A stretch of 64,000 nucleotides of DNA from the IMG/VR virus record IMGVR_UViG_3300043446_005562, positions 62,001 through 126,000 of that record; one strand, given 5' to 3'. The position numbers were made by a program, and so were the translations under genes. Shown here piece after piece: positions 1,538 through 25,100 of this stretch. The notes under the pieces were generated by a model. It worked only from the letters and a program-made list of their open reading frames with translations, was not told the origin of the DNA and did no database searches. Positions within the stretch are counted from its first letter, which is position 1. Each line of letters begins with the position of its first letter.

Positions 1538-2164
1538 TTAAAAGTATTGTTCTAAATTATCTTTCATTTGCGGATTTTTCTCCAGCACCCGGTCCCTAAC
1601 CATTTTTCTGGCTTTGCGAATTTTGGTCTTGACTGTATTGAGATTCATGCTGTATTTTTCAGCAATTTCATTGCCTTTCATTGAATGAATCTCCTTGTCA
1701 ATTAGGATGGACTTTTCAATGCACTCAGGTAAATCAGCCATCTCCATTTGAGTCATTGTGTAGAGAGAATCAAGATAGAGTTCCTTTTCAAAATTAAAGG
1801 CTGAATCATCCTCAATCGCAGGCGGTGTCAACATATTATCCAAACGAACTGCCCATTGTTTTTGAAGCTTATGTTTGTGTAGTAGAGATTCGTTCTTGGC
1901 AATCGTATAGATCCAGGTCGTGAATCTAAAGTTGTCGTTGTACGATGAGATTCCCTTGAATATTTTAAAAAGAGTGTTGTGTAGCACCTCGTCAGTCTCG
2001 TCTTGATCGTTAAAGAACTTCCAAATAAAATACTTTAATTTTGGATACATGATTGAGGCTAATCGATTGCGATCGCGTTCAGTGTACTCTCCACTCTTGA
2101 TTTTTTCAGCTAGGGATTGCATTTCATCGTTTAGCTGTCTGTTGATTAAGTCGTATGACGTCAT
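1538..2164 (-). CDS. ECF-type (sigma-70 family) RNA polymerase sigma factor
   Basis: Region-2-like DEVLHNTLFKIF...FRFTTWIYTIAKN and region-4 HTH-like EIAEKYSMNLNTVKTKIRKARK. Confidence 0.88.
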   Translation of the reverse strand: MTSYDLINRQLNDEMQSLAEKIKSGEYTERDRNRLASIMYPKLKYFIWKFFNDQDETDEVLHNTLFKIFKGISSYNDNFRFTTWIYTIAKNESLLHKHKLQKQWAVRLDNMLTPPAIEDDSAFNFEKELYLDSLYTMTQMEMADLPECIEKSILIDKEIHSMKGNEIAEKYSMNLNTVKTKIRKARKMVRDRVLEKNPQMKDNLEQYF

Positions 2165-2171
2165 TTATTTT

Positions 2172-2894
2172 TTAGTTAAAGAATTTATGATTTGGGTTTT
2201 CATCTTTCCATTTTTCGTATCGTTCGGTAATCTGTATTAGAATACGGTTGCGAACAATATCTTCATCTCCGAATTTGTGTATCGATATGCCTTGAATGCC
2301 AGTCATCAATTTTATAAAATCAGGTAGAGCTACTTTACTCTTATTAATATCATATTGGCTTACGTCGCCGCAAATTAATGTTTTAGAGTCCTTACCCATT
2401 CTGGTCAAAAAGAGCATAAGCTGTTTGAAATCAGCATTTTGAGCCTCATCAAGTATCATTAGACAATTATCAAAGGTAGCGCCTCTCATATAGGCAAGAG
2501 GTCTAAATTCAATAACGCCAGCTCCTTCGAGCCAGTTAACAAGATTTGGATCATGTAATATCTTTACCAAATTTGATCGATAACTTTCCATGAATGGATC
2601 AATCTTATCCTTGATTTCACCGGGTAAAAATCCCAGTTTTTCGCCGGACTCTTGAATCGGCTTGGATAGGATGATCTTTTTTATTTTACCTGAAATATAG
2701 AGATTTAGCGCAGCTAGACATGCAGTAAACGTTTTGCTTGTGCCGGCTGGTCCATAGCAAAATGTGATTTCGCTAGAGAGTATTCGATTTAGGTATGCCT
2801 GTTGAGAAGGCTTGAGTGAGATTGGACGTATGTCCTTTTCAGTAATTTCAGTAACTGTGCGTTGAGTTTTCCTAGAGGATTTGTTACTTGGCAT
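2172..2894 (-). CDS. phoH: PhoH-like ATPase
   Basis: GPAGTSKT Walker A, LGFLPG, RGATF, ILDEAQN and GDVSQYD motifs. Confidence 0.95.
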   Translation of the reverse strand: MPSNKSSRKTQRTVTEITEKDIRPISLKPSQQAYLNRILSSEITFCYGPAGTSKTFTACLAALNLYISGKIKKIILSKPIQESGEKLGFLPGEIKDKIDPFMESYRSNLVKILHDPNLVNWLEGAGVIEFRPLAYMRGATFDNCLMILDEAQNADFKQLMLFLTRMGKDSKTLICGDVSQYDINKSKVALPDFIKLMTGIQGISIHKFGDEDIVRNRILIQITERYEKWKDENPNHKFFN

Positions 2895-3183: not shown

Positions 3184-5130
3184 TTAGGTATTTCCATAGA
3201 ATTTTTGCAAAGTCTCCCTATAATAATCCACGTACTCCTGATCAGCCTGTCTGGTTGTACCAGCTCGTTTTGCAAGATTCGACTGATTTAGATTGCGTAG
3301 AGTTTCAAAATCGTACTTTGAATCTTTTGTTAAATATACTTCATTTAATAACTTTGAGTAGACCTCGGCCAAATATTCCTTTGGTTGATTGTCGATTTCC
3401 TCATTTGCAATTTCCCAAAAATTAGGTGATTCAAAAAAGGCAGAAGTATTAACACATGTCATGGCTAAATCGTCATTACCGCTCTGGCTTCGATAGGATC
3501 CGTTTGAGGATTTACCAAAGGAGCCAAGCTCATGAATTGTCTTGAATTCATTTGGCAAAATTTTATTGACTGCCGCAAGATACTTGAATCTTTCGCAGAA
3601 TTTTATCTTATTGGTCATGGTCAGTTTTAAACCAGGCTTCCAACCCTGAGCGGCTTCAGTATGTTTTGAAAAGACGAGCATGCCGTTCCAATAGGCTTCG
3701 TTTTTCATGATCTTATCCATTACGTACTCGCCCTTGTGGTTTAACTCAATCAACATTCTAACCTTTTCCGGATTAAAAACGTTAAAGATGATGTGCTCTA
3801 GAGAATTGCAGAACTCATTAATGTCTTTCTTATTGGTTCTAAATGTTGCAACCTGCACAAGTGCAAAAATATCGGTTTCATTCTTGATAAAGTCTTTCAC
3901 CTGCTCCAGCATTTTTATGGGTAGAGCAACAAACTTGAATACATTGACAACCGAATAGTCTCGACTCAGGCCATCCGCTGTATCGACCGAGATAACGTAA
4001 TAATTGGGATCGGCTTTAATGTCATCTGGTGATAACTTGTTAAAGTTTGGATGAACCGAAAATCCGTCCAATATGTCTAATCTATCCGGGGTTTGGGCCC
4101 ATTCTGGGATGAGATAGTCAGTCCTGAGATTGAATATTTTTTTAAGATCCTTGGACGGCAATAGCAGCTTATCAGATGAAAAGAACTGGAGCCCATATTC
4201 CTGATTGAAATCTTCCTCTGATCCCAAGTTGGCAATCGTCATCTTCTTCCATTCATCGTCACGGCCAGGTACCTGCCACCAGTCAACCCTAAGCGGCACA
4301 TAGGCGTTCTTTTGTTCAAGCGCATCCATGTAGATCTCATAAAAACGGTTCATTCCGTTCGGCGTGGATGTGATGATAATTTTTGAATTGGTTGAGGCTG
4401 AAATTGTCGGATAGATTGCTCGATAAAAGAAATCCAGATAGGATGGATTGATGTGCGCAAATTCGTCAATATAGAGTACGTGAATCGTAAAACCAATACC
4501 CGTGTTTTTGGTGGTAGTACGCCCAATCAAGCGACAGCCGTTGTCGAACTTCATTGACATTACGTTATTTGAAATACAGCCAGGTTTTAAAAAGAATGGC
4601 AGATTCTCAAATACTGATTTGATTTTATCCAATACCTCTTTGGTCGTGGATGCAATGTTTGCAACAGCTAACACATTTTTATCAGTGTGAAATATGAGAT
4701 ACCAGGCAATGAATACGCCTGACATGACAGTCTTTCCAATTTGTCGACTTGCCATTAGACAATTGAATCGATTGTTCTTAAAGGACCTAATGATCTCTTC
4801 TTGATAATCACGCAGTTTGATCTGTTGAATTCCGTCCTCGGTCATTACCTGCGCGTACTTACTTGCAAAATAGACTGGATCGGCCTTACATCGCTTGATT
4901 TCCTCAAGCTCCTCCGGCGTGTATTCAAAAACAATATTGGCTTTTTTCCAAACAGGATCATTGTCTTTGAACGGCGAATTTTTGATTGTTTTAATATCAA
5001 TCAAACCATTCTCAAAATCAGCCAATAGCTGATCGACTTTTGCGGTGGTCCAAATTGCACTATTCTCTTGATCAAGATTGGATAGCTTGATTCTAGAAGC
5101 TCCACCTGCATTGGTTAAGAAATCTTTCAT
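3184..5130 (-). CDS. terL: Terminase large subunit (T4 gp17-like)
   Basis: RQIGKT Walker A, YIDEFAH Walker B, STPNGMN coupling motif, VDTADG and NDDLAM nuclease aspartates. Confidence 0.95.
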   Translation of the reverse strand: MKDFLTNAGGASRIKLSNLDQENSAIWTTAKVDQLLADFENGLIDIKTIKNSPFKDNDPVWKKANIVFEYTPEELEEIKRCKADPVYFASKYAQVMTEDGIQQIKLRDYQEEIIRSFKNNRFNCLMASRQIGKTVMSGVFIAWYLIFHTDKNVLAVANIASTTKEVLDKIKSVFENLPFFLKPGCISNNVMSMKFDNGCRLIGRTTTKNTGIGFTIHVLYIDEFAHINPSYLDFFYRAIYPTISASTNSKIIITSTPNGMNRFYEIYMDALEQKNAYVPLRVDWWQVPGRDDEWKKMTIANLGSEEDFNQEYGLQFFSSDKLLLPSKDLKKIFNLRTDYLIPEWAQTPDRLDILDGFSVHPNFNKLSPDDIKADPNYYVISVDTADGLSRDYSVVNVFKFVALPIKMLEQVKDFIKNETDIFALVQVATFRTNKKDINEFCNSLEHIIFNVFNPEKVRMLIELNHKGEYVMDKIMKNEAYWNGMLVFSKHTEAAQGWKPGLKLTMTNKIKFCERFKYLAAVNKILPNEFKTIHELGSFGKSSNGSYRSQSGNDDLAMTCVNTSAFFESPNFWEIANEEIDNQPKEYLAEVYSKLLNEVYLTKDSKYDFETLRNLNQSNLAKRAGTTRQADQEYVDYYRETLQKFYGNT

Positions 5131-5871: not shown

Positions 5872-6117
5872 TTAGTTTAATCGATTTTCGTTCTTGTCAA
5901 GAGCCGGGTTTGCAAATATCTTGATCTGTTTCACAGCCTCAATGTGTTCATAAATATAGGTTTCAATGTAACCCATGAAACTGTCTAATACAGGGTTTGC
6001 ATCAAACATTTGATTAGACAGAGTTCTTTTTAATAGACTGCCCTTGTATTTAAAACCTAGGTGTAAGCGTCGGTCCTTTCGATTGTAGATTGTCCAATAG
6101 AGAGAATTTCTTATCAT
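5872..6117 (-). CDS. Small hypothetical protein, possibly baseplate-associated
   Basis: 81 aa; start overlaps the stop of the baseplate wedge gene. Confidence 0.55.
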   Translation of the reverse strand: MIRNSLYWTIYNRKDRRLHLGFKYKGSLLKRTLSNQMFDANPVLDSFMGYIETYIYEHIEAVKQIKIFANPALDKNENRLN

Positions 6118-7802
6118 GATAAAAGTCCTAATTTTTTACGAATTGACTTGTCCGGTTTTATTTCAATATTTAATGCGCTCAGCGTGCTATCTGAAATCCC
6201 AGCCTGATAGGCATTACCGCTACGATCTGTCCAACCTCCTCTAATTACTGGAAATTCAGACGGCTTAATAATAATATCGTTAAATTCATCCAGCCCAACC
6301 CGTTTGGTTTCGTCCCGATTTGGATTGTCCTTAAAGGCTTTTTCGTTCAGTTCTGACAGAATGGCCACGCTAACAGAATCGACTCCGTTTATCTCTTCAA
6401 TGATTTTAATTAAATCGCTCTTTGGCACACGGTCATTACGATTAAGTTTTATAAAGTAATTACCGACCGCGTCTGCAATATCCGATTTAATAATATCGGT
6501 TGCAACATCGTCAAATGCAACAACGCTGACGTTTAAAACATAGCGAGTAATTATGGGATCCAATAGATTAATCTCGGATGAAATCATCTTGGTACCAGAT
6601 TTTTCAATGTATTTTAAAAGTTCTTTCTTTTGAAACTCCGTCAATTTGAATTTGGTTAGAGATAGTTTAAAGTAGTCAGTGCCGGTTTTAAATAATTTAG
6701 AGACGTCCGGTACCAGAAATAGATTGATCATGCGAGAATCAAGTTCATCCAAAAATACTCTAACCGTTGAGAACATCTGCATTTTATGTAGCAGCACTTC
6801 ATAATTATCAACGTTAACGAGCGCAAAATTCTTTGAGGCTTTTGGCGCAATCAATCTGGTCAATTCAATCTCTTCCGGATCAACTCCAAAACTCGGTGGA
6901 CTTATTGTAAAAATATCAAAATACTCGTTCATATTGACCTCTTCGCCGATTGGAGAAAAGGCTGTTTCCGCGAATGTGAATTGAACTTGGCTTGCACTAT
7001 CGACCAAAACATTACCGCCAGCCCCTTCTGATACAAGATACTCGACGATTATTTCGGATCCAGCTGGTGGAATTTTACCAAATGAACCGTTTCCAAAATA
7101 AATGTCCAGACCGTTTGTTATGCCGGTTTTGGCAATAAAACCTTTACCACCGCGTGGAATGTCCAATAGCGAATCGTATTTTGTCCATTGTTCGCCATTA
7201 ACGTACACGTTAACTCGGAAATGATCAATGTAGTAGTTATATGGATGGCCTAACTGATAGCTCTCCAGCGGCTGACCCTTACCAGTAAATGTTTGGGATT
7301 CAATTTGACCCTGGCGCAAGTTAAAAATTGCAACAGTTTCATCGCCAGTTAAGTTTAGTCTAATCTCGTCCTGTGGTAATTCAATGACGTAGGTTAGGTT
7401 ATTATTGGAACAGGTTAATTTAAAAAGATCGTTAAGTAGAACCTTTGTTGCCGGTGGATTAATATTGGGTTTTCTAACTATTCTAATTTGAGAGGTTGCA
7501 CCGATTGCTCGACTTGGATTGTGACCTGCTAAACTTGCTAATGAATAGATTGAAGAAGGCCGAGTTGCCTCGTTAATGTTAAGTTCGGTGATTGAGTCCT
7601 CAATGTAATAAAAAATTAACTGACTTAAATTTTCAAAAACAATTAGTAATTGACCAAATGGCGAAGATGCCGTGAATATGGTCTTTGCCTGCTTGAATCT
7701 TTCCTGTAGAAATGTGATTGTCTCTCCAAGAATATCATTTATTCGGATTTTTAAGCTGGTAAAAAGCCTAAGGGAAGTATTTTGACTTGATAAATTGGCC
7801 AT
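6114..7802 (-). CDS. Baseplate wedge subunit (T4 gp6 / baseplate J-like)
   Basis: SIYSLASLAGHNP, IYFGNGSFGKIP, IVEYLVSEG.GGN and ALVNVDNYE motifs typical of gp6. Confidence 0.85.
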   Translation of the reverse strand: MANLSSQNTSLRLFTSLKIRINDILGETITFLQERFKQAKTIFTASSPFGQLLIVFENLSQLIFYYIEDSITELNINEATRPSSIYSLASLAGHNPSRAIGATSQIRIVRKPNINPPATKVLLNDLFKLTCSNNNLTYVIELPQDEIRLNLTGDETVAIFNLRQGQIESQTFTGKGQPLESYQLGHPYNYYIDHFRVNVYVNGEQWTKYDSLLDIPRGGKGFIAKTGITNGLDIYFGNGSFGKIPPAGSEIIVEYLVSEGAGGNVLVDSASQVQFTFAETAFSPIGEEVNMNEYFDIFTISPPSFGVDPEEIELTRLIAPKASKNFALVNVDNYEVLLHKMQMFSTVRVFLDELDSRMINLFLVPDVSKLFKTGTDYFKLSLTKFKLTEFQKKELLKYIEKSGTKMISSEINLLDPIITRYVLNVSVVAFDDVATDIIKSDIADAVGNYFIKLNRNDRVPKSDLIKIIEEINGVDSVSVAILSELNEKAFKDNPNRDETKRVGLDEFNDIIIKPSEFPVIRGGWTDRSGNAYQAGISDSTLSALNIEIKPDKSIRKKLGLLS

Positions 7803-7823
7803 TATTAACGGACTTCTTTTTGA

Positions 7824-7832
7824 TTATTTATC
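7824..7832 (-). promoter_or_regulatory. Putative T4-like late promoter (GATAAATAA) for the baseplate/terminase operon
   Basis: Motif 21 nt upstream of the ATG at 7802; recurs before about 11 genes. Confidence 0.55.
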
Positions 7833-7867
7833 AGTCCAATCTTTTCTTTAGAGAAACCGTGACCTTG

Positions 7868-7876
7868 GATAAATAC
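7868..7876 (+). promoter_or_regulatory. Putative late promoter (GATAAATAC) for the tmRNA
   Basis: Motif 27 nt upstream of the tmRNA 5' end; divergent from the motif at 7824. Confidence 0.5.
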
Positions 7877-7903
7877 TTTTAGTACAATACTTTTATACTA
7901 CAT

Positions 7904-8272
7904 GGGGGTGCTTGGATTTGACGTGGGCAGTTTAAGTACGCTCGCATGCCGAGGAAGATGCTAAGACTCGTTAAAACGTATCGAAACGATAAGTGGCAAC
8001 ACTACCTTCTGGAGTCTTGTTAACGAGAACGTTAACGCTCCTGTCGCAGAAGAGCTCCTAGCAGCCTAAGCGACCAAGCGGCAACTGCTTGACTAAAACA
8101 AAGTTGCAAAACCAGCATGGCGTGACGGCCAAGTCGAACCGTCACCGACTTTTTGCCCCAAGTCGTTAAAGAACGGGATAGTTTGTCCAGTTAGAAAACG
8201 GGACCAAGCATGTGAACGAGGGCCTATTTAAGGGTCAAACGGACGAGGGTTCGACTCCCTCCACCTCCACCA
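7904..8272 (+). ncRNA. ssrA: Transfer-messenger RNA (tmRNA)
   Basis: 5' GGGGGTG pairs with 3' CACCTCC including a G3:U wobble, followed by A-CCA; 5' GGATTTGAC; T-arm GAGGGTTCGACTCCCTC; tag ORF 7995-8069 ends in LAA-stop. Confidence 0.96.
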
Positions 8273-8278
8273 AAGGTT

Positions 8279-8307
8279 AAGGGCTCTTCGGAGCCCTTTT
8301 TCTTTTT
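8279..8307 (+). terminator. Rho-independent terminator after tmRNA
   Basis: AAGGGCTC-TTCG-GAGCCCTT hairpin followed by a T-rich run. Confidence 0.9.
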
Positions 8308-8320
8308 AATTTTCCGGGCT

Positions 8321-8329
8321 GATAAATAA
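8321..8329 (+). promoter_or_regulatory. Putative late promoter (GATAAATAA)
   Basis: Lies just after the terminator and 5 nt before the ATG at 8335. Confidence 0.55.
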
Positions 8330-8334
8330 ACAAT

Positions 8335-9087
8335 ATGAAAGCTTTAAACACGGACGACATTTTTCTCAGAAATTTAACGATTGCTCTGCTTGATCTGCTA
8401 AACGGCTCAATGAATATTACCTTGTCTCGAGAAGATCACAAGGAGACTTTCACGGTTCCATTTCTCTACAATTTTGGAACGGACGAGGGTTTCTTAAAGG
8501 ATTTTTACATAGGCCTACCCGACAACTGTCAAATTCCAGTCGCGGAAGGTACTTACGATATTATTCCAAGGGGCATAGTTACGCTTAGCTCCTTTCAGGT
8601 AAAATCGTCAGATATTACAAATCGATTCGTTAGAGGTCAGTATGCCGAGCCTGAGAGGGGAGACAATGATCAGAACGTTCTCACAGGCTATTCGGCTCAA
8701 CTCTATTCTCTACCAATGTCGGTTAAATTTGATGTAAAAATCATTTGCGATAATTTAAACAAGGCTTTTAAAATCGCTGAGAGAATGCTAGACATTAACT
8801 ATGCAAATCGAGTGATGTATTTTCAATACAATGGTGTTAGAATCCCGGCGCAATTTCAGTTTCCAACCAATGAAACCATTGATAAAACTTACAAATTCAC
8901 GCTGGTTGAAAACAATAAACTAAATGTTAGCCTTTCAATCGACGTTGAGACCTACTTTCCGAGTTTTGAACAAAGCTCAAAAAGAAAGAGCACAAATGTT
9001 ATTGAGAGATTTAATTACACTAAAAAGGATGCGGGCGGCACAATTATGACATCGGGTTGGGTTGACCAAAATACAAAAGTTGACTAA
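8335..9087 (+). CDS. Tail sheath stabiliser / tail completion protein (T4 gp15-like)
   Basis: N-terminal F...LRNLTIALLDLLN, 'TVPFLYN', and later 'LPMSVKFDVKI' pattern resemble gp15. Confidence 0.7.
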   Translation: MKALNTDDIFLRNLTIALLDLLNGSMNITLSREDHKETFTVPFLYNFGTDEGFLKDFYIGLPDNCQIPVAEGTYDIIPRGIVTLSSFQVKSSDITNRFVRGQYAEPERGDNDQNVLTGYSAQLYSLPMSVKFDVKIICDNLNKAFKIAERMLDINYANRVMYFQYNGVRIPAQFQFPTNETIDKTYKFTLVENNKLNVSLSIDVETYFPSFEQSSKRKSTNVIERFNYTKKDAGGTIMTSGWVDQNTKVD

Positions 9088-12895: not shown

Positions 12896-13657
12896 TTAAG
12901 TACTGATTATGAAGGCTGGGCATCTATAAAAATCAACACCGGCTTGGCCCTCCCAGACGTTATTTGGAGAGTTCTTTGCTGCATCAAGAAACTGGGCCTG
13001 ATGAGCTAATGATTCACCGGTATGATGATCGAGTATGTCTAAATTAACGTTGTAACCGTTGTTAAGATCCTGATTTACAATGGACCAGTAATATCTGACT
13101 CCGCCGTTTGCTCCACTGGTCGATTGGCTTGTACCATTACCACCGGCTGCAATATTGCCGTAAAAATCTACTCCGCCACCGGCTGGCCACATTTGAGATG
13201 GTGGCGGCGCAAACGTTATGCCAGGGATTTGAAAAATCCACTCACTCCAAAGACGTATGTTAACATCAATATTGGTGTTTGGATCATTGGTTACAACTTC
13301 AAGGCGCCCTCGATTGTCAAAGGGCCAGTGATCATATCCTTTAAAATCTCCCCATCGTATTTTGCCATTGCTCCACGCATAATTATAGATATTTTCGCCA
13401 GATGTGCTATTGCGATTAATATAATAAGAAGTTCCTGAATATGTTCCAGCCGTAATGTAGCCGTTCATTGAGCTATGGGGAGCAGGATTCGAAGAATCTA
13501 GATCAAATTGTGCAATATCGCCTGCCGCAAGACTGGCTGTTCCGTTTTGAGTGAATGCTCTGATCAAACTATTGGTCGAGGTTGTGCCGACTGATGTGCC
13601 GTTCCATCCAACTCTCACGCTGGAGCCGCTCTGCATTACGTATGGACTTGTTGCCAT
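12896..13657 (-). CDS. Probable fibre-associated virion protein
   Basis: 253 aa, G/N/S-rich beta-type composition; start overlaps the stop of the giant fibre gene. Confidence 0.6.
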   Translation of the reverse strand: MATSPYVMQSGSSVRVGWNGTSVGTTSTNSLIRAFTQNGTASLAAGDIAQFDLDSSNPAPHSSMNGYITAGTYSGTSYYINRNSTSGENIYNYAWSNGKIRWGDFKGYDHWPFDNRGRLEVVTNDPNTNIDVNIRLWSEWIFQIPGITFAPPPSQMWPAGGGVDFYGNIAAGGNGTSQSTSGANGGVRYYWSIVNQDLNNGYNVNLDILDHHTGESLAHQAQFLDAAKNSPNNVWEGQAGVDFYRCPAFIIST

Positions 13658-16600
13658 TAACTTAGTTTATTTTTTAAGTCCTCAATCTGGGCCTGCTGTT
13701 CCTTGATTGCCTCAATCAGGACCGAAACCAGATTTGCATAGGAAACTGCTTTGGTACCGTCCGGATTGGTGAAGACCACCTGCGGGAATGCCGCTTCCAT
13801 CTCCTGCGCAATGACTCCAGCGTAAACTCTAGTCTGGTCTTCTTGATCGTTACGTGTGAAGGTTACACCGCGCATTGCCTTTACCTTAGCCAGGGCGTCT
13901 GTGATGGTTTCAACATTATCCTTAACCGATCGATCTGAAAAGGCTATAATATTACCGGCTGCATAGATATCTCCAGTACCACCGCCGACCGTACCAACTT
14001 CAAGCGTATAACCTGGAGTTGCACCAGCATTCACGCTTAATCTCGCATTGGTTTGATCCCAATAGAGTTGATTCGTATCATCAACTGCTGCACCCGTTGC
14101 TGGGTAATAAGCAACATAGCCTGCATTACCGGAGTTTACCGTACCCGAACCTCCACCGCCGGAAATCGTAACGTCCGCCTGGCTACCCGAAGCGGCAACG
14201 GTTGCGCCCGACACAAAGTTAATAGAGGTAGCGCTTGAAACAATGGTGGTTCCAGCTTGTTTAACCGAGACAGCTGATGCGGTTCCAGAAGTTCCGCTTG
14301 AGCCAGAAGTTCCTGAAGAACCCGCTGCTCCTGTTGCGCCGCTTGTTCCTGATGATCCAGAAGTTCCTGACGAACCTGCGGGACCAGTCGCTCCAGTAGC
14401 ACCGCTTGTTCCTGAAGAACCTGAAGTTCCTGAAGAACCTGAAGTTCCTGACGAACCTGCTGCACCGGTTGCTCCGCTTGTACCTGAAGAACCTGAAGTT
14501 CCTGAAGAACCAGCTGCACCGGTTGCTCCGCTTGTGCCAGAAGAACCTGAAGTTCCGTCTTTTCCATTAAATACCCATGATACTGTGTAGTAAGAGGTTG
14601 TGTTCACTATACCAGTTCCAGCGAGTAGGGTATTTAATTGTATGTCGTAGTATGTTGTCTGATTTGTGAAAGTTCCAACTTTCCATGCTCCAATTGCTGC
14701 GTTGTTGCCAACCTCTGTTATTTGAAGATAAGAGACATTTCCTGCTGCGAGCATTGTGCCCAATGTATTAAACCAAGTTGCGTATGCTGTGCCAAATGTG
14801 TCCTGTCTTGAAATACTTAATTTAGTAGCTGTCCCAAGGTTAGTTGTGTCTAATTTGAATTGACCGAGACCTGGTGAAGAATATGCAAGCGCACTATTAT
14901 CAAACCTCCATCGACCTGAGTTTGAACCGTCATTACCTGCTGCTCCAGCCGCTCCGGTTGCTCCGCTTGTTCCACTAGAACCTGAAGTTCCCGAAGAGCC
15001 TGAAGTTCCAGAAGAACCTGCTGCTCCAGTAGCACCGCTTGTTCCGCTACTTCCACTTGTTCCAGAAGAACCGGCTGCACCGGTTGCTCCACTTGTGCCA
15101 GAAGAACCCGAAGTTCCACTAGAGCCTGATGATCCGGAAGTTCCTGAAGAACCTGCCGCACCGGTTGCTCCGCTTGTTCCTGAAGAACCGGACGTACCTG
15201 ACGAACCAGCAGGACCTGTTGCTCCGGTTGCTCCACTTGTACCAGAAGAACCAGATGTTCCGCTTGATCCAGAAGAACCAGAAGTTCCGCTAGAGCCTGA
15301 TGATCCAGAAGTTCCTGAAGAACCTGCTGCACCAGTTGCGCCGCTTGTTCCAGAACTGCCTGATGTGCCAGAAGATCCTGAACTACCTGATGTGCCTGAG
15401 CTTCCAGAAGAACCTGATGTTCCACTACTTCCACTTGTTCCAGATGAACCTGCAGGACCAGTCGCTCCAGTAGCACCACTAGTTCCTGAAGAACCTGAGC
15501 TACCTGACGTACCTGAACTACCGGACGTTCCCGAAGAACCGGCTGCTCCAGTCGCTCCACTCGTACCTGAAGAACCCGAAGTTCCTGAGCTACCGGCAGC
15601 ACCAGTTGCTCCGCTAGTTCCTGATGAACCAGATGTTCCGCTTGAACCAGACGAGCCGCTAGTTCCCGATGAACCTGAAGAGCCTGATGTTCCACTAGAG
15701 CCTGATGTACCGCTTGCTCCACTTATACCGCTAGTTCCGCTTGAACCGGATGAACCGCTTGTTCCTGAAGAACCGGCAGCACCCGTTGCTCCACTCGTAC
15801 CTGAAGAACCTGAAGTTCCTGAGCTGCCGCTTGAACCTGAAGTTCCCGAAGAACCTGAACTGCCGCTTGTTCCGCTAGAACCGCTAGTTCCCGAAGAACC
15901 TGCTGCACCAGTTGCACCGCTTGTTCCAGAAGAACCAGATGTTCCCGAAGAACCCGCTGCTCCGGTTGCTCCACTAGTTCCTGATGAACCGCTAGTTCCT
16001 GAAGATCCTGAAGAGCCGCTAGTTCCTGATGAACCGCTTGAGCCAGATGTTCCCGAGCTTCCGCTAGTTCCTGAAGAACCTGAGGAACCGCTAGTTCCGC
16101 TTGAACCTGAAGTTCCAGATGAGCCAGATGTTCCTGAGCTACCGCTTGTTCCACTTGAACCACTTGTTCCTGAAGAACCGGCTGTACCGTTTTTACCATT
16201 AAACCACCAGCTAATTACATGTTCATTACCGTTAGTTAAAGTTCCAGTGCCGGCATTCAAGTTTAAATCAACTTGTACAACGTTTCCAACTGGAGAACCA
16301 ACTGCTGTGATTGCATAAACTCCTCCAATTCCAGTAGTTAATTCAAAAATTTCTAAGTATGCTTGATTACCTGCAGTTACTTGAGTTTGAATAGCCGACC
16401 ACCATTGAGTTGAATTGAATGAACTTGGTCTGTATGCCGTTATATTTACATAAAATTTGTTAATTAAACCGACGTTCGTTGTAGCAGTTACACCCGCATA
16501 ATAGTTAATGTTTGTAGAACCTGGTGTAGTTGAAGCGCTTGAATTGAATATCCATGAAACGCCGTTTCCTATTGAACTTGCACCCGAAGTACCTGAGCTG

Positions 16601-19600
16601 CCGCTTGTTCCACTAGAACCTGAAGTACCTGAGCTACCTGAAGATCCGGATGTTCCAGATGATCCCGATGTACCTGATGAACCTGACGATCCACTTGTAC
16701 CGCTGCTTCCACTTGAACCTGATGTTCCACTTGAACCTGAACTGCCTGAAGTACCCGATGAACCGCTAGTACCGCTAGAACCGGAAGTTCCAGATGAACC
16801 TGAAGAACCTGATGTACCGCTTGATCCAGACGAGCCAGATGTTCCTGACGAACCGCTAGTACCAGAGGAACCTGAAGAACCACTAGTTCCGGATGAACCG
16901 CTTGAACCGCTTGTTCCAGACGAGCCAGAACTTCCTGAAGTACCACTTGAACCCGAGCTTCCAGATGTACCAGAAGAGCCAGATGTTCCAGAGCTACCTG
17001 AAGTTCCGCTAGATCCAGATGAACCTGAAGTACCTGAAGAACCTGAGCTACCAGAAGTTCCACTTGATCCTGATGTACCAGAAGAACCTGATGTTCCTGA
17101 GCTTCCACTAGTTCCTGATGAACCTGAAGAGCCAGATGTTCCCGAAGAACCACTACTACCACTTGTTCCACTTGAACCCGATGTTCCGCTACTACCCGAT
17201 GAGCCGCTAGTTCCTGAAGAACCGCTGCTTCCTGATGTCCCACTTGAACCACTTGTTCCAGAAGAACCCGAAGATCCTGATGTGCCAGATGAGCCTGAAG
17301 AACCTGAAGTTCCTGAGCTTCCGCTTGTTCCTGAGCTACCCGAACTACCAGAAGTTCCACTTGAACCTGAAGTACCTGAAGATCCAGAAGTTCCAGAAGA
17401 ACCGCTTGAGCCTGATGTTCCTGAGCTACCAGATGTTCCCGAAGAACCAGAAGTACCTGAAGATCCAGAAGTACCTGAGCTGCCTGAAGAACCTGAAGTT
17501 CCAGATGAACCGGACGAACCAGAGGTTCCAGAGCTTCCTGAAGTTCCTGAACTACCTGATGTTCCAGAGCTACCGGATGTACCGGAAGAGCCTGAGCTTC
17601 CGCTTGTTCCGCTTGAACCTGAACTTCCGCTAGTTCCGGATGAACCGCTTGAGCCTGAAGTACCACTACTACCTGATGAACCTGAAGAACCACTTGTTCC
17701 GCTTGAACCTGAAGAACCGCTAGTACCTGAACTTCCCGAAGTACCTGATGAGCCAGACGTTCCTGAAGAACCTGAAGAACCAGAAGTTCCGCTTGAGCCT
17801 GAGCTTCCTGATGTACCGCTACTTCCACTTGTACCACTTGAGCCAGAAGTTCCTGACGAACCGCTTGAACCAGAGGTACCGCTACTACCTGATGAACCTG
17901 ACGTTCCTGAAGAACCAGAAGAACCCGATGTTCCTGAGCTACCGCTTGTACCACTTGAACCTGATGTTCCACTGCTGCCTGATGAACCGCTAGTACCAGA
18001 AGAACCTGAAGTACCAGAAGATCCACTTGAACCAGAGGTACCAGAACTTCCTGAAGAGCCGGATGTTCCAGAGCTTCCGCTTGTACCAGATGAACCTGAA
18101 CTTCCAGAGGTTCCAGATGAACCACTAGAACCTGAAGTTCCAGAGCTTCCTGATGTACCCGATGAGCCTGAGGTTCCAGCGCTTCCGCTAGTACCAGATG
18201 AACCGCTTGATCCGGACGTACCATTTACTCCAGAAAGACCAGATGTTCCACTTGAGCCTGATGTACCTGAACTTCCTGAAGAGCCAGATGTTCCAGAGCT
18301 TCCGCTTGTACCTGAACTTCCAGATGTTCCAGATGAACCGCTTGAGCCCGAAGTCCCTGAGCTACCAGATGTTCCGCTTGAGCCTGACGAGCCGGATGTT
18401 CCGGAAGAACCTGAGCTGCCAGACGTGCCTGAAGATCCAGAAGTACCTGAGCTTCCACTTGTTCCGGATGAACCTGAAGAGCCGCTTGTTCCGGATGAAC
18501 CTGAACTACCGCTTGTTCCACTTGAACCGCTTGAACCTGATGTTCCTGAAGAACCTGAGGTGCCAGAACTTCCTGAAGTACCAGAAGAACCTGAACTACC
18601 GCTTGTTCCACTAGAACCGCTTGAACCTGATGTTCCTGAAGAACCGCTCGTTCCTGAAGAACCAGAAGAACCTGATGTTCCTGAAGAACCTGATGTACCA
18701 GATGACCCTGATGTTCCACTTGAGCCTGATGAGCCACTTGTTCCTGAACTACCCGAACTTCCACTTGTACCTGAAGAACCACTAGTTCCTGATGAACCTG
18801 AACTTCCAGATGTTCCTGACGAACCAGAAGAACCTGATGTTCCGGAACTACCACTAGTTCCTGATGAACCACTAGTTCCAGAAGAACCCGAAGATCCGCT
18901 TGTTCCGGATGAACCGCTTGAGCCGCTAGTTCCAGAGCTACCTGATGTTCCAGATGAACCTGACGTACCTGAACTACCACTAGTTCCAGAAGAACCGCTT
19001 GAACCTGATGTTCCTGAAGAACCTGAACTACCTGAAGTTCCTGAAGAACCGCTAGTTCCTGATGAACCTGAAGAGCCAGATGTTCCTGAGCTACCACTTG
19101 TTCCACTTGAACCAGATGTACCTGAACTACCTGAAGTTCCTGAAGAACCGCTGCTTCCCGATGTCCCACTTGAACCACTTGTTCCAGAAGAACCCGAGGA
19201 TCCTGATGTGCCAGATGAGCCTGAAGAACCTGAAGTTCCTGAGCTTCCACTAGTTCCGCTTGAACCTGATGTACCACTAGAGCCTGAACTGCCTGAAGTA
19301 CCTGAACTACCACTTGAGCCAGAAGTTCCTGACGAACCGCTTGAGCCTGAAGTACCACTACTACCTGATGAACCGCTAGTACCAGAGGAACCTGACGTTC
19401 CTGAAGAACCGCTTGTTCCTGATGAACCGGATGAGCCAGAAGTTCCACTTGAACCGGACGAACCAGAGGTTCCAGAGCTTCCTGAAGTTCCGCTTGAGCC
19501 AGAGCTACCGCTTGTTCCTGATGAACCTGAGCTACCGGATGTACCGGAAGAGCCTGAACTTCCGCTTGTTCCTGATGAACCCGACGTTCCTGAAGAACCA

Positions 19601-22121: not shown

Positions 22122-25100
22122 TTATCGTGGTCGATTAGTTCCGACCAAGAAATTTGCCCAACCGCTCAATGATGGAGGTAGGGCATTCCAGCTACCTGCT
22201 GGAAAAGGAGTTTGTCCACTAGATACAACGGTTCCACCAATCCAATAGTCATCGGTATGTGTCACATTATCGTTGAATAAAGTGTATGAAGAGACTTCTT
22301 CTGTGTGGAAATAAACGTCATCCAACAGAATACCTTTACTTGTACCTTGAGGATCTGTGTATATGAAATTTGGAGAACCTCCAGTTAGTCCAAGCGAAGC
22401 AAATGTCGTTTGGTGAATACTTAATCTGGATTCAACAGTATATGAAGAATTTAGATCTAAAAGCATCCAACTTTCGCTAGAAGCAGTTGCTGTTCCTGGG
22501 GTAAGTACGCTGTTTGGACGGCGGTTATACATTTCAAAATGGCAACCTCTAATGTATGCAGTAGACTGATCTAGCGATACAAGATAGCAGTACACATTAT
22601 TGTTTGCGCCAGTATCAACAATCTCACAATTTTCCAAATACAGAGATGAATATCTTGCTAAAATTGCATAGGCCCCGTTTGATGAATGGTCTACCTGTAT
22701 TTTGATATTATTCATCTTTAGTGAGCCGTTTGCTACAAATATAGCGTTCATAGTCGGCACTGATATTACGCTGTTATAACGACCCGATCCAGTTATTGTC
22801 AACTCAGCAGCAGTCAACCAAGTATTACCAGCAGAGCCTGATACAGCTAATGTTACGCCTGGCTCAAAGTAGAGAGATACATTGTATGAACTCGATACAG
22901 TTACCGTAGTCGATTCAGTATAGGCTCCTCTAAATACATGAATTGTATAGCTACCTGCTCCAAGAGCAGAAAGGCCATTTAAAGCGCCGTTGATTGTTTG
23001 CCAAGGTAAATCTAATCTACCTAATTGTGCAGTAGTATTATTTCCATTCGGATCAACAAATAAAGTTTGAGCATATCCTATTGCTTGGAAAGAGGTTCCA
23101 CTTGTTCCGCTTGATCCTGAAGTTCCACTTGAGCCAGAAGAACCCGATGTGCCTGACGAACCAGAAGTTCCAGAAGATCCGCTTGAACCTGACGTTCCAG
23201 AGCTTCCACTGGTTCCTGACGAACCACTAGTTCCGCTTGAGCCACTAGAACCAGATGTTCCTGAAGATCCTGAAGTACCTGACGAACCAGACGAGCCAGA
23301 TGTTCCGGCTGAACCTGACGTACCAGATGAACCTGAACTACCTGATGTTCCGGAAGAGCCTGAGCTTCCACTAGTTCCACTAGAACCAGATGTACCACTT
23401 GAACCTGATGAACCTGAAGTTCCTGAGCTACCTGATGTTCCAGATGAGCCACTGGAACCGCTTGTGCCCGAAGAACCTGAAGTTCCACTAGATCCCGAAG
23501 ATCCAGATGTTCCCGAAGAACCACTTGATCCAGATGTTCCGGACGATCCACTAGTTCCTGATGAACCTGAACTACCTGATGTTCCCGAAGAACCGCTAGA
23601 GCCTGACGTACCTGAGCTTCCACTAGTTCCTGATGAACCTGAAGTTCCTGAGCTACCTGATGTTCCAGATGAGCCACTTGAACCTGAAGTGCCACTAGAT
23701 CCTGAAGATCCTGAAGTTCCGCTTGAGCCACTAGTTCCACTAGAACCAGATGTTCCTGAAGAACCGCTAGATCCTGACGTACCGGAGCTTCCACTAGTAC
23801 CTGAAGAACCGCTACTACCGGATGTTCCCGAAGAGCCCGAAGTTCCGCTACTTCCTGAAGATCCTGAGGTACCAGACGATCCTGAACTACCTGATGTTCC
23901 GCTTGAACCGCTTGTTCCTGAAGAACCTGAACTACCTGATGTTCCCGAAGAACCTGAAGTACCACTTGACCCTGATGTACCTGATGAACCTGAGCTTCCG
24001 CTAGTACCAGATGAACCACTTGAGCCTGAAGTTCCTGAGCTTCCGCTAGTTCCTGATGAACCTGATGTACCGCTTGAGCCAGATGTACCGCTTGAACCTG
24101 AAGAACCACTTGTTCCGCTTGAACCTGAAGAACCACTTGTTCCGCTTGAACCTGAAGAACCTGATGTACCTGATGAACCTGAGCTTCCTGAAGTTCCGCT
24201 TGAACCGCTTGTTCCTGAAGAACCCGAGCTTCCACTAGTTCCGGATGATCCACTTGAACCCGACGTTCCCGACGAACCGCTTGTTCCACTTGAACCAGAA
24301 CTTCCGCTTGTTCCAGAAGAGCCTGAGCTTCCTGAAGTACCACTTGAGCCAGATGTTCCACTAGAACCACTACTACCTGAAGTACCAGATGATCCCGATG
24401 TACCGGAAGATCCACTTGTTCCACTAGATCCACTTGAGCCTGATGTACCAGATGATCCTGAAGTACCAGATGAACCGCTTGTTCCGGATGAACCTGAGCT
24501 TCCTGAAGTACCGCTTGAACCTGATGTTCCTGAGCTTCCGCTAGTACCTGATGAACCTGACGAACCGCTTGTTCCGCTTGAACCGCTTGAACCTGATGTC
24601 CCAGAAGATCCACTAGTTCCTGACGAACCCGATGTACCTGAACTTCCTGATGAACCTGATGTACCAGAGCTGCCTGATGTTCCAGATGATCCCGAAGATC
24701 CTGAAGTACCAGATGAACCGCTGCTTCCTGATGTGCCCGAAGAACCAGAGGTTCCACTTGAACCTGATGTACCTGAGCTACCACTAGAACCGCTAGTACC
24801 GGATGAGCCGCTAGAACCCGAAGTTCCTGATGAACCTGAACTTCCACTAGTTCCGCTAGATCCACTTGAGCCGGAAGTTCCTGATGAACCTGACGTACCC
24901 GATGATCCGGAAGTTCCACTTGAACCGCTGCTACCTGATGAACCTGATGTTCCGCTAGAACCTGATGTTCCTGATGAACCTGAACTGCCGCTTGTTCCTG
25001 AAGAACCGCTTGAACCTGAGGTTCCTGAAGAGCCTGAACTTCCAGAAGTACCGGATGAACCGGCTGTTCCGCTAGATCCTGATGTTCCAGATGAACCACT

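What the first reader, a model, noticed from the sequence alone, without database searches (positions are those of the whole stretch)
7904..8272. Phage tmRNA with an unusually long tag containing an in-frame hairpin
Seen: the likely resume codon GGC at 7995 gives (A)GNTTFWSLVNENVNAPVAEELLAA-stop, 24 codons. The tag contains a perfect hairpin GTTAACG-AGAA-CGTTAAC (8019-8036) encoding VNENVN. Known: typical tags are about 10-11 aa. Bacteroidota tags usually start with G, and C-terminal LAA is the ClpXP degron. Inference: the tag keeps the degron but adds a new N-terminal part (FWSLV), which may change adaptor or protease routing of rescued proteins. No smpB is present in the window, so host SmpB is probably used.
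Basis: partly seen in the sequence, partly recalled or inferred. Interest (0 to 1): 0.6.

Follow-up and report, generated by a model that had tools for sequence, protein, structure and literature searches.

The report
Jumbo-phage tmRNA with long structured tag
A freshwater jumbo phage carries its own, apparently expressed ribosome-rescue RNA (tmRNA) whose protein-marking tag is about 2.5 times the usual length, is conserved across a whole phage clade, and is distinct enough from bacterial tags to act as a natural barcode for what phage tmRNAs do.

Summary
Window 7904-8272(+) is a full-length one-piece tmRNA (Rfam RF00023, 101 bits). The resume codon is GGC at 7995, followed by a 24-codon tag and TAA at 8067. 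A perfect 7-bp hairpin lies at 8019-8036. The window is part of a 252.6-kb jumbo myovirus.

62 related viral contigs all carry a homologous tmRNA with a 23-27-codon tag. The full-length frame is well supported. All 50 alignment gaps in the ORF are 3 or 6 nt. pN/pS is 0.27-0.50 in frame against 0.9-1.2 out of frame. All 20 variants are open only in this frame.

The tag is modular: a conserved N-terminal motif, GNTx(F/I)W(S/D)(L/V)(V/I)N; a middle that is free as peptide but kept as an RNA hairpin by compensatory changes; and an ssrA-like C-terminus. Tags are 8-10 codons in 78 of 81 tmRNAs from the likely host phylum, and 10 codons in two related huge phages.

Metatranscriptome contigs cover the tmRNA at far greater depth than its flanks. 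The gene has its own conserved promoter motifs and terminator.

The window's genome lacks SmpB because of a real 7.9-kb indel, but sister phages encode it.

Phage tmRNAs and long tags (Mycoplasma) are both known, so this is a new variant of a known kind. What the extra tag part does is untested.

The parts
7868..7875 (+). GATAAATA motif, like a T4-type late promoter, upstream of the tmRNA
   Evidence: (T/G)ATAAATA is conserved at the same relative position upstream of nearly all clade tmRNAs. The same motif (8321-8329) precedes the downstream tail gene. The promoter role is inferred.
7880..7888 (+). TAGTACAAT, a -10-like box 16 nt before the mature 5' end
   Evidence: The consensus scan reports TACAAT ending at 7888. 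TAGTA(T/C)AAT is conserved across the clade. Function is inferred.
7904..8272 (+). One-piece tmRNA gene (ssrA), 369 nt, with the CCA encoded
   Evidence: Rfam RF00023, 101.4 bits, E 1.8e-38, full model. Homologs are present in all 62 related loci.
7904..7910 (+). 5' strand of the acceptor stem (GGGGGTG); G3 at 7906
   Evidence: Pairs with 8262-8268. G3:U70 (7906:8266) is kept in all clade members, and the stem covaries.
7990..7994 (+). Resume context TAAGT directly before the resume codon
   Evidence: Nearly invariant in the clade. The bacterial tmRNA L129 has the same TTTTAAGT|GGAAACACT context.
7995..8069 (+). Tag reading frame: 24 codons plus TAA (8067-8069)
   Evidence: 3n-only indels, and open only in this frame in 20 of 20 variants. 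pN/pS 0.27-0.50 against 0.92-1.23 in the control frames.
7995..8024 (+). Conserved N-terminal tag module GNTTFWSLVN (codons 1-10)
   Evidence: Clade consensus GNTx(F/I)W(S/D)(L/V)(V/I)N. pN/pS 0.31 with synonymous variation, for example CTT/CTA/CTC/TTA at the Leu codon.
8011..8041 (+). In-tag two-tier hairpin: outer stem GGAG 8011-8014 / CTCC 8038-8041; inner stem 8019-8025 / 8030-8036; loop AGAA 8026-8029
   Evidence: Folded in all 20 tag variants. Compensatory changes: GC 13 / AU 7 and UA 13 / CG 6; 82.6% paired against 32-44% when the partners are slid. It sits where bacterial helix 5 sits but carries no stop codon.
8043..8074 (+). Second hairpin, GTCGC 8043-8047 / GCGAC 8070-8074, enclosing the last 6 sense codons (AEELLAA) and the stop
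   Evidence: MFE fold. 4 of its 5 pairs show changes on both sides.
8049..8066 (+). C-terminal tag module EELLAA (ssrA-like degron end)
   Evidence: Clade variants end in LLAA, LVAA, LLVA, ALVA, AVAA, AIAA, LVA or LVEA. pN/pS 0.35. Degron function is inferred from knowledge of ssrA tags.
8075..8091 (+). Third hairpin after the stop codon (CAAGC / GCTTG)
   Evidence: 100% paired, with 3 of 5 pairs changed on both sides.
8245..8272 (+). T-arm (8245-8261), 3' acceptor strand CACCTCC (8262-8268, U70 at 8266), discriminator A 8269, CCA 8270-8272
   Evidence: Rfam alignment with high posterior probability. 94-97% identical to the 3' ends of Bacteroidota tmRNAs. Many clade members lack the encoded CCA.
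8279..8308 (+). Intrinsic terminator: 8-bp stem, TTCG loop, T-run
   Evidence: Most clade members have terminator hairpins of differing sequence at this place.
6114..7802 (-). Upstream neighbour: baseplate wedge protein (context only)
   Evidence: phrog_219, E 8e-33.
8335..9087 (+). Downstream neighbour: T4 gp15-like tail sheath stabiliser (context only; used as the anchor to find relatives)
   Evidence: PF16724, 25.5 bits. 62 related loci found.

Best explanation
This is a functional tmRNA encoded by a phage. It is transcribed from its own promoter-to-terminator unit inside the structural-gene region of a roughly 250-kb freshwater myovirus.

Inferred steps: the host AlaRS charges it with alanine (G3:U70 identity pair). 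It enters stalled ribosomes with SmpB. In this phage that must be the host's SmpB, while sister phages bring their own. Translation then resumes at GGC 7995.

Shown by comparative analysis: the ribosome reads all 24 codons, melting a conserved hairpin on the way. That hairpin sits where bacterial helix 5 normally carries the stop codon. Translation ends at a TAA held in a second hairpin.

The appended peptide has three modules. (a) An N-terminal motif, GNTx(F/I)W(S/D)(L/V)(V/I)N, selected as peptide. (b) A middle that is selected as RNA pairing, not as peptide. (c) An acidic and hydrophobic C-terminus ending in -LAA or -LVA, which most likely hands rescued chains to host AAA+ proteases, since the phage encodes none.

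The most likely benefit to the phage is extra ribosome-rescue capacity during infection. The aromatic and hydrophobic N-terminal module may add a second recognition site for a protease or adaptor.
For: Identity as a tmRNA.

Functional tRNA-like domain: G3:U70 is kept and the acceptor stem covaries across 33 unique sequences.

Conserved in all 62 related loci.

Translated over its full length: 50 of 50 gap runs in the ORF are 3 or 6 nt, against 8 of 126 and 40 of 217 multiples of three in the non-coding flanks. 20 of 20 variants have stops in both other frames. pN/pS is 0.50 (0.27 in the close subclade) against 0.92-1.23 in the other frames. By module it is 0.31 / 1.06 / 0.35.

Hairpin.

Expression: RNA-library contigs lie on 7917-8263 at word depths 346, 427, 66 and 6.8, against 2-5 on the flanking genes. 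None crosses the intergenic gaps. This holds in 4 runs from 4 studies.

Own promoter motifs and terminator.

No ClpP, Lon, SspB, RF-1/ArfB or SmpB in the phage genome.

Sister phages encode an intact SmpB with its C-terminal tail. This shows that the clade invests in trans-translation.

Precedent for a long hydrophobic, aromatic tag that redirects protease choice: PMC8403727.
Against: There is no experiment. Charging, tagging and degradation are all inferred. Contigs cannot show RNA ends, strand or true abundance (caveat printed).

Pairwise pN/pS counts are not phylogenetically independent. Part of the N-terminal conservation could be an RNA constraint: the first three codons are invariant even at the third position, and the TGG-AG of the Trp-Ser codons forms the outer stem.

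Some clade tags end in -VEA (L008, L009), which may be a poor ClpX-type degron.

The conserved -10 box TATAAT is not the usual Bacteroidota promoter type, so the host assignment, and therefore the host-tag comparison, is only moderately secure.

The record is 93% complete, so an SmpB gene in the unassembled part cannot be fully excluded.
Confidence: 0.7

Rival explanations
1. The RNA drives the extension and the peptide is a passenger. The extra ~11 codons exist because an additional stem-loop was inserted into the mRNA-like domain, or because helix 5 lost its stop codon. The RNA structure is what selection keeps, for stability, folding or SmpB and ribosome handling. The N-terminal peptide motif has no recognition function of its own. 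The tag works only through its ssrA-like C-terminus, or ribosome rescue alone matters.
For: The middle of the tag has pN/pS 1.06 while pairing is kept through compensatory changes. The first three codons are invariant at all three positions, which looks like an RNA constraint. TGGAG of the Trp-Ser codons is the outer stem. The hairpin sits exactly where helix 5 sits in bacterial relatives. A 2-codon insertion in L048 and L050 lengthens the stem.
Against: Trp is kept in subclades where the outer stem has shifted register (L045, L052). The Leu/Val/Ile codon lies in the unpaired internal loop, yet it varies only among aliphatic codons, using seven different codons. pN/pS for the N-terminal module is 0.31, against about 1 in the other frames.
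Confidence: 0.2
2. Short tag: translation really resumes downstream of the hairpin, for example near the GCT at 8037, which would give a tag of about 10 residues (APVAEELLAA). The upstream open frame is then not translated.
For: A 10-residue tag would match the usual length. ARAGORN chose a downstream GGC in one relative, L050.
Against: 3-nt indels occur upstream of the hairpin, in L008-L010 and L040, and every indel in the region is a multiple of three. The upstream module shows a coding signature. The TAAGT|GGC context matches the resume contexts of bacterial tmRNAs, and the Rfam alignment puts the model's resume region there. The proposed downstream site is base-paired inside the hairpin. 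ARAGORN calls the upstream codon in 25 of 26 relatives.
Confidence: 0.05
3. Decoy or saboteur: the phage RNA mainly titrates host SmpB, AlaRS or EF-Tu to shut down host trans-translation, as proposed for the TLD-only molecule of mycobacteriophage DS6A. Alternatively it adds a tag that stabilises or relocalises proteins rather than degrading them.
For: The literature notes that a TLD-like molecule can inhibit tmRNA (PMC4131195). This genome has no SmpB of its own. Some tags end in -VEA.
Against: A decoy would not need an ORF that is conserved, kept in frame and selected as peptide, with an ssrA-like end. Sister phages add their own SmpB, which supports productive trans-translation.
Confidence: 0.04
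4. Passenger or relic: a host tmRNA gene or an attP-type fragment picked up by imprecise excision, with no role for the phage.
For: Prophages commonly integrate into ssrA and carry fragments of it (PMC9004378).
Against: The gene is full length and has its own conserved promoter motifs and terminator. No integrase is present in the genome. It is present in all 62 related loci, including ones whose neighbouring protein is only 63% identical. No close bacterial counterpart exists: only the last 33 nt match at BLAST level in 300 genomes, and the tag motif occurs in only one of 185,579 species genomes, on a phage-sized contig.
Confidence: 0.01

Closest known systems
Canonical one-piece bacterial tmRNA (Rfam RF00023), especially Bacteroidota tmRNAs with GNTQYAMAA, GNTSYALAA or DNNYSYRLAA tags
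   Same: Same architecture: acceptor stem with G3:U70, T-arm, a UAAxU-type resume context, a tag beginning GNT, a C-terminus ending in -AA, and a stop codon inside a hairpin. The 3' 33 nt are 94-97% identical. The SmpB of sister phages is 55-56% identical to SmpBs of this phylum.
   Different: The tag is 24 codons (23-27 in the clade) instead of 8-10. There is an extra stop-less hairpin at the helix-5 position and an FW-containing motif. Only 81-101 bits to the Rfam model, against 93-198 bits for the bacterial ones. It is encoded by a virus.
Known phage-encoded tmRNAs: mycobacteriophage Bxz1 group, Bacillus phage G, huge phages such as LR756500, Prevotella phage Lak-A2
   Same: A full-length tmRNA in a large phage genome alongside many tRNAs. 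Some huge phages also encode SmpB (PMC7162821, PMC4131195, PMC9004378).
   Different: The two relatives I could read have ordinary 10-codon tags: GNNAEMRMAA and DDEIDFRMAA. The tag motif of this clade was found in no paper in the searchable library.
Mycoplasma ssrA tag (27 aa, directed to Lon)
   Same: A long tag enriched in hydrophobic and aromatic residues, where length and composition are tied to which protease recognises it (PMC8403727).
   Different: No sequence relationship. Mycoplasmas lack ClpXP, whereas the likely host phylum has short ClpX-type tags. The protease specificity of the phage tag is unknown.
Mycobacteriophage DS6A TLD-only tmRNA-like molecule
   Same: A phage-borne tmRNA derivative that may interfere with or exploit host SmpB (PMC4131195).
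   Different: The present RNA has a complete mRNA-like domain and a conserved ORF.

Membership tests
tmRNA (RF00023, one-piece) | Score above the family's curated threshold over the whole covariance model | tested here: met
   101.4 bits against a gathering score of 47, model positions 1-374 of 374.
tmRNA (RF00023, one-piece) | tRNA-like domain: 7-bp acceptor stem with the G3:U70 alanine identity pair, T-arm, discriminator A, 3' CCA | tested here: met
   7904-7910 pairs with 8262-8268, with G3:U70 at 7906:8266. The stem covaries and G:U is kept in all 33 unique clade sequences.
tmRNA (RF00023, one-piece) | Internal ORF without a start codon, in a resume context, ending in a hydrophobic Ala-rich C-terminus and a stop codon | tested here: met
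   TAAGT|GGC, then 24 codons ending in LLAA, then TAA. Coding signature.
tmRNA (RF00023, one-piece) | Pseudoknot PK1 between the tRNA-like domain and the resume codon, and PK2-PK4 downstream | tested here: inconclusive
   Rfam aligns a helix at about 7959-7985 with moderate posterior probability. By eye, CGAG/CUCG and GAUGC/GUAUC can form an H-type knot. The downstream pseudoknot region aligns poorly. I did not test it by covariation.
tmRNA (RF00023, one-piece) | The RNA is expressed as a discrete stable molecule | tested here: met
   Metatranscriptome contigs are confined to the tmRNA body, at 13- to 130-fold the word depth of contigs on the flanking genes in three of the four runs (the fourth has no contig on the flanks); 4 runs from 4 studies. 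Caveat: contigs do not give ends or strand.
tmRNA (RF00023, one-piece) | Works with SmpB | not testable with these tools
   No SmpB in this genome. The colinear site lacks the 7.9-kb SmpB block that sister phages have. Use of host SmpB is inferred.
tmRNA (RF00023, one-piece) | Aminoacylation with Ala and addition of the tag to stalled nascent chains | not testable with these tools
   Needs biochemistry or mass spectrometry.
Lon-directed long ssrA tags (Mycoplasma type) | Tag recognised and degraded by Lon rather than ClpXP | not testable with these tools
   The only shared properties are length and aromatic, hydrophobic content (PMC8403727). There is no sequence similarity. This is a resemblance of kind, not membership.
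Prophage attP / ssrA fragment | Partial 3' ssrA copy next to an integrase | tested here: not met
   The gene is full length and the genome has no PF00589 integrase.

The most novel reading that the evidence does not exclude
The conserved FW-containing N-terminal module is a recognition element specific to the phage. It gives chains rescued by the phage tmRNA a different fate from host ssrA-tagged chains. For example, they might be delivered to Lon or another AAA+ protease, or to an unknown adaptor, or they might escape a host adaptor. The extra stop-less hairpin at the helix-5 position would then tune the phage tmRNA's handling by SmpB and the ribosome. On this reading the clade runs a partly private trans-translation pathway, complete with its own SmpB in sister phages.
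Probability: 0.2. Interest if true: 0.7.

Novelty: new variant of a known kind. Interest (0 to 1): 0.5.

Why it matters
Why phages carry tmRNAs is an open question. Published suggestions range from keeping the hijacked translation machinery running to selective degradation of host proteins (PMC9004378, PMC7162821).

In this clade the tag is long, conserved and unlike any bacterial tag sampled. Proteins tagged by the phage tmRNA could therefore be told apart from host-tagged ones by mass spectrometry. The tag has no Lys or Arg, so it would appear as one diagnostic C-terminal peptide, even in freshwater metaproteomes and without a cultured host.

The clade also offers a natural comparison between tmRNA-only phages and tmRNA+SmpB phages. 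It gives a clean case in which peptide-level and RNA-level selection can be separated within one 75-nt reading frame.

A practical point: ARAGORN at default settings misses this gene and 6 of the 32 clade members tested, so surveys that rely on ARAGORN undercount such tmRNAs.

Tried and rejected
- blastn of the tmRNA against 50,697 phage records found no match.
- An exact 33-mer scan of viral contigs found no match.
- Using the upstream baseplate protein as an anchor for related loci gave no confirmed relatives. The downstream gp15-like protein worked.
- RNAalifold on the whole clade gave no consensus for the tag region, because the subclades differ in register. I replaced it with an explicit structure count and per-sequence folds.
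- The second genome-contig hit (L066) is a chance match, not a tmRNA.
- Occurrences of the FW motif in phage proteins are at chance level: about 0.5 expected and 3 seen, one of them inside a real ORF at 12896-13657.
- The attP-relic, decoy and short-tag readings were considered and rated low (see the rival explanations).
- There was no sign of an alternative genetic code. The 19 tRNAs include no suppressor and the ORFs are intact under table 11, so none was used.
- The 7.9-kb SmpB block of the sister phages holds a lysozyme, a GT2 glycosyltransferase and proteins of unknown function, but no protease or adaptor.
- The phage-clade profile against bacterial tmRNAs gave only weak full-length matches (35-38 bits), so the donor lineage is not resolved.
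- I did not use the search for homologous proteins, the search of protein representatives, structure prediction or complex prediction.

Full report
**1. What is there**

Rfam places a complete tmRNA (RF00023) at window 7904-8272 on the + strand: 101.4 bits against a threshold of 47, E 1.8e-38. The whole-genome search gave the same hit.

Read directly, GGC at 7995 follows TAAGT and opens 24 sense codons, GNTTFWSLVNENVNAPVAEELLAA, ending at TAA 8067-8069. Codons 9-14 are a perfect 7-bp hairpin with an AGAA loop (8019-8036).

ARAGORN reports nothing at default settings. With a lowered threshold it gives the same resume codon and tag.

**2. Context**

The window is bases 62,001-126,000 of a 252,618-bp IMG/VR virus record that is estimated 93% complete.

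- Genes around the tmRNA: large terminase (3184-5130), a small-terminase-like gene, baseplate wedge (6114-7802), a T4 gp15-like tail sheath stabiliser (8335-9087), PhoH, a sigma factor, and two giant collagen-repeat proteins.
- The terminase is 31-38% identical to those of uncultured huge phages, Sphingomonas phage PAU, the Prevotella Lak phages and Tenacibaculum phage PTm1.
- The genome has 19 tRNAs, none a suppressor.
- It has no SmpB, ClpP, Lon, SspB, RF-1/ArfB or integrase.

**3. A conserved clade feature**

Using the downstream gp15-like protein as an anchor, I found 62 related viral contigs with 63-92% protein identity. Every one has a homologous tmRNA, giving 33 unique sequences.

The tags are 23-27 codons long and share this pattern: GNTx(F/I)W(S/D)(L/V)(V/I)N, then a variable stretch, then an acidic stretch, then L/A-(A/V)-A. 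One subgroup resumes at GAC instead. ARAGORN at default settings detects 26 of the 32 members tested and independently calls the same long tag in 25 of them.

**4. Is the whole frame translated?**

Three independent signatures say yes.

- *Indels.* In a plain MAFFT nucleotide alignment, all 50 gap runs inside the ORF are 3 or 6 nt. In the non-coding 5' and 3' parts of the same RNA, only 8 of 126 and 40 of 217 are multiples of three. Some of the 3-nt indels lie upstream of the hairpin.
- *Stop codons.* All 20 distinct tag variants are open in this frame, and all have stops in both other frames.
- *Substitutions.* Nei-Gojobori pN/pS is 0.50 for the whole clade and 0.27 for the close subclade. 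The two shifted frames give 0.92-1.23.

The signal is modular. The N-terminal motif has pN/pS 0.31, the C-terminal eight columns 0.35 and the middle 1.06.

Caveats: the pairs are not phylogenetically independent, and the first three codons are invariant at all positions, which points to an RNA constraint near the resume site.

**5. The hairpin**

Every tag variant folds into a two-tier hairpin at the same relative place. In the window the outer stem is GGAG 8011-8014 with CTCC 8038-8041, and the inner stem is 8019-8025 with 8030-8036.

On the clade alignment the structure I specified is 82.6% paired, against 32-44% when the partners are slid. Compensatory changes occur in the in-tag stem: GC 13 / AU 7 at one pair and UA 13 / CG 6 at another. 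The subclades use different stem sequences, and a two-codon insertion in one subclade lengthens the stem.

A second stem (8043-8047 with 8070-8074) encloses the last 6 sense codons and the stop, and it also covaries. A third hairpin (8075-8091) is always paired.

In the nearest bacterial tmRNAs, and in two huge-phage tmRNAs, a single hairpin starts 15-20 nt after the resume codon and carries the stop. Here a hairpin starts at nt 17 but has no stop, and a second one carries it. The Rfam model likewise puts its helix 5 on the in-tag hairpin, with low posterior probability.

So either an extra in-frame stem-loop was inserted, or helix 5 lost its stop and the frame ran on. I cannot tell which.

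**6. How unusual is the length?**

In 81 tmRNAs sampled from the phylum of a Bacteroidetes-labelled bin, 78 tags are 8-10 codons. The three longer calls look like ARAGORN resume errors. LR756500 and Lak-A2, which are related by terminase, have 10-codon tags. PAU, PTm1 and LR745206 have no tmRNA.

A pattern for the resume context plus the start of the tag hit only two of 185,579 species genomes. One hit is a chance match. The other is a 254-kb phage-sized contig binned into an 'uncultured Bacteroidetes' MAG, whose own tmRNA has a short tag read as EANYAMAA.

The tag motif occurs in no paper in the searchable library.

Long tags as such are known: Mycoplasma pneumoniae has a 27-aa tag, rich in hydrophobic and aromatic residues, that is degraded by Lon (PMC8403727). 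Phage tmRNAs as such are also known (PMC4131195, PMC7162821, and PMC9004378, which found them in 2.3% of isolate phages).

**7. Expression and transcription unit**

Upstream of nearly all clade tmRNAs lie a (T/G)ATAAATA motif and a TAGTA(T/C)AAT box. In the window these are at 7868-7875 and 7880-7888. Downstream, most members have a terminator hairpin of varying sequence; in the window it is at 8279-8298.

In four metatranscriptome runs from four studies (three riverine, one sediment), contigs lie on about 7917-8263. Their word depths are 346, 427, 66 and 6.8, while contigs on the flanking genes have depths of 2-5. Nothing spans 7808-7915 or 8294-8347. As the tool warns, contigs cannot give RNA ends, strand or true levels. 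The very deep pieces at 8240-8272 come from the conserved 3' ends of other organisms' tmRNAs.

**8. SmpB**

- Four complete relatives of about 270 kb encode an intact 140-aa SmpB with its C-terminal tail (151.8 bits).
- Four further viral contigs carry it at 76-79% identity.
- The 254-kb contig in the Bacteroidetes bin carries it at 75% identity.

In the relatives the gene sits in a variable block next to a topoisomerase-II-like gene. In the window's genome the flanking genes are colinear and only about 400 nt apart (251,047 to 251,445). The 7.9-kb block is therefore missing at that site through a real indel, not because the contig ends there.

This phage, as assembled, must use the host's SmpB. 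That is an inference.

**9. Host and origin**

Evidence for a host in the Bacteroidota (GTDB sense):

- the binning of the sister contig;
- the GNT start of the tag, and a resume context shared with some tmRNAs of that phylum;
- the phage SmpB being 55-56% identical to SmpBs of that phylum, against at most 50% in the other phylum sampled;
- terminase relatives in phages of Bacteroidota.

Evidence against: the conserved TATAAT-type box is not the usual promoter form for Bacteroidota (my own knowledge). The phage does have its own sigma factor, however.

I rate this host assignment as moderate.

**10. Verdict**

This is a real, expressed, clade-conserved phage tmRNA. Its tag is about 2.5 times the usual length and combines a selected N-terminal peptide motif, an RNA-selected hairpin and an ssrA-like end.

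The mechanism of rescue and tagging is inferred from family knowledge. The purpose of the extra module is open.

It is a new variant of a known kind, of moderate interest. Its main value is as a natural barcode for studying what phage tmRNAs tag.

Noticed in passing
window 13657-22089(-) and 22122-29666(-): Two giant ORFs (2810 and 2514 aa) are collagen triple-helix repeat proteins. The first ends in a Peptidase_S74 (endosialidase chaperone) domain, so they are probably tail fibres. The region has higher G+C (0.47-0.50 against about 0.38) and long spurious antisense ORFs, which is typical of such repeats. Long Gly/Pro-rich repeats only 5 kb from a tmRNA might be a source of ribosome stalling, but that is speculation.
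   Followed up: partly
L171:8992-16771 (a 270-kb sister phage), against genome positions 251,047-251,445 of the window's record (outside the window): A 7.9-kb block of 8 ORFs (phage lysozyme, SmpB, a GT2 glycosyltransferase and five of unknown function) lies between a 452-aa gene and a topoisomerase-II-like gene in the sister phages. It is absent at the colinear site in the window's genome.
   Followed up: yes
window 8321-8329: The GATAAATAA motif, the same as the one upstream of the tmRNA, sits 6 nt before the ATG of the gp15-like tail gene. It recurs downstream of the tmRNA in many relatives and is likely the phage's late-promoter motif.
   Followed up: partly
window's genome, about 211-229 kb (outside the window): A cluster of 19 tRNA genes covering 17 amino acids, with no suppressor.
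   Followed up: no
L008, L009, L030, L052 (tag ends): Some clade tags end in -LVEA (L008, L009). Some use TAG (L008, L009, L030) or TGA (L052) as the stop instead of TAA. About two thirds of the unique sequences lack an encoded 3' CCA.
   Followed up: no
window 1538-2164(-) and 2172-2894(-): A phage-encoded sigma-70-family factor (regions 2 and 4) and a PhoH-like ATPase lie near the terminase.
   Followed up: no
window 12896-13657(-): A 253-aa ORF of unknown function contains YWSIVN, which resembles the tag's FWSLVN motif. Given the number of positions searched, this is probably chance.
   Followed up: partly
window 3184-5130(-) against LR745206, LR756502, LR756504, LR756500: The terminase matches these huge-phage records in two separate pieces, which suggests an intervening sequence (intron or intein) in their terminase genes.
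   Followed up: no
window 7904-8272: Default ARAGORN misses this tmRNA and 6 of the 32 clade members tested. Rfam finds all that were tried. Phage surveys that rely on ARAGORN alone will undercount this type.
   Followed up: yes
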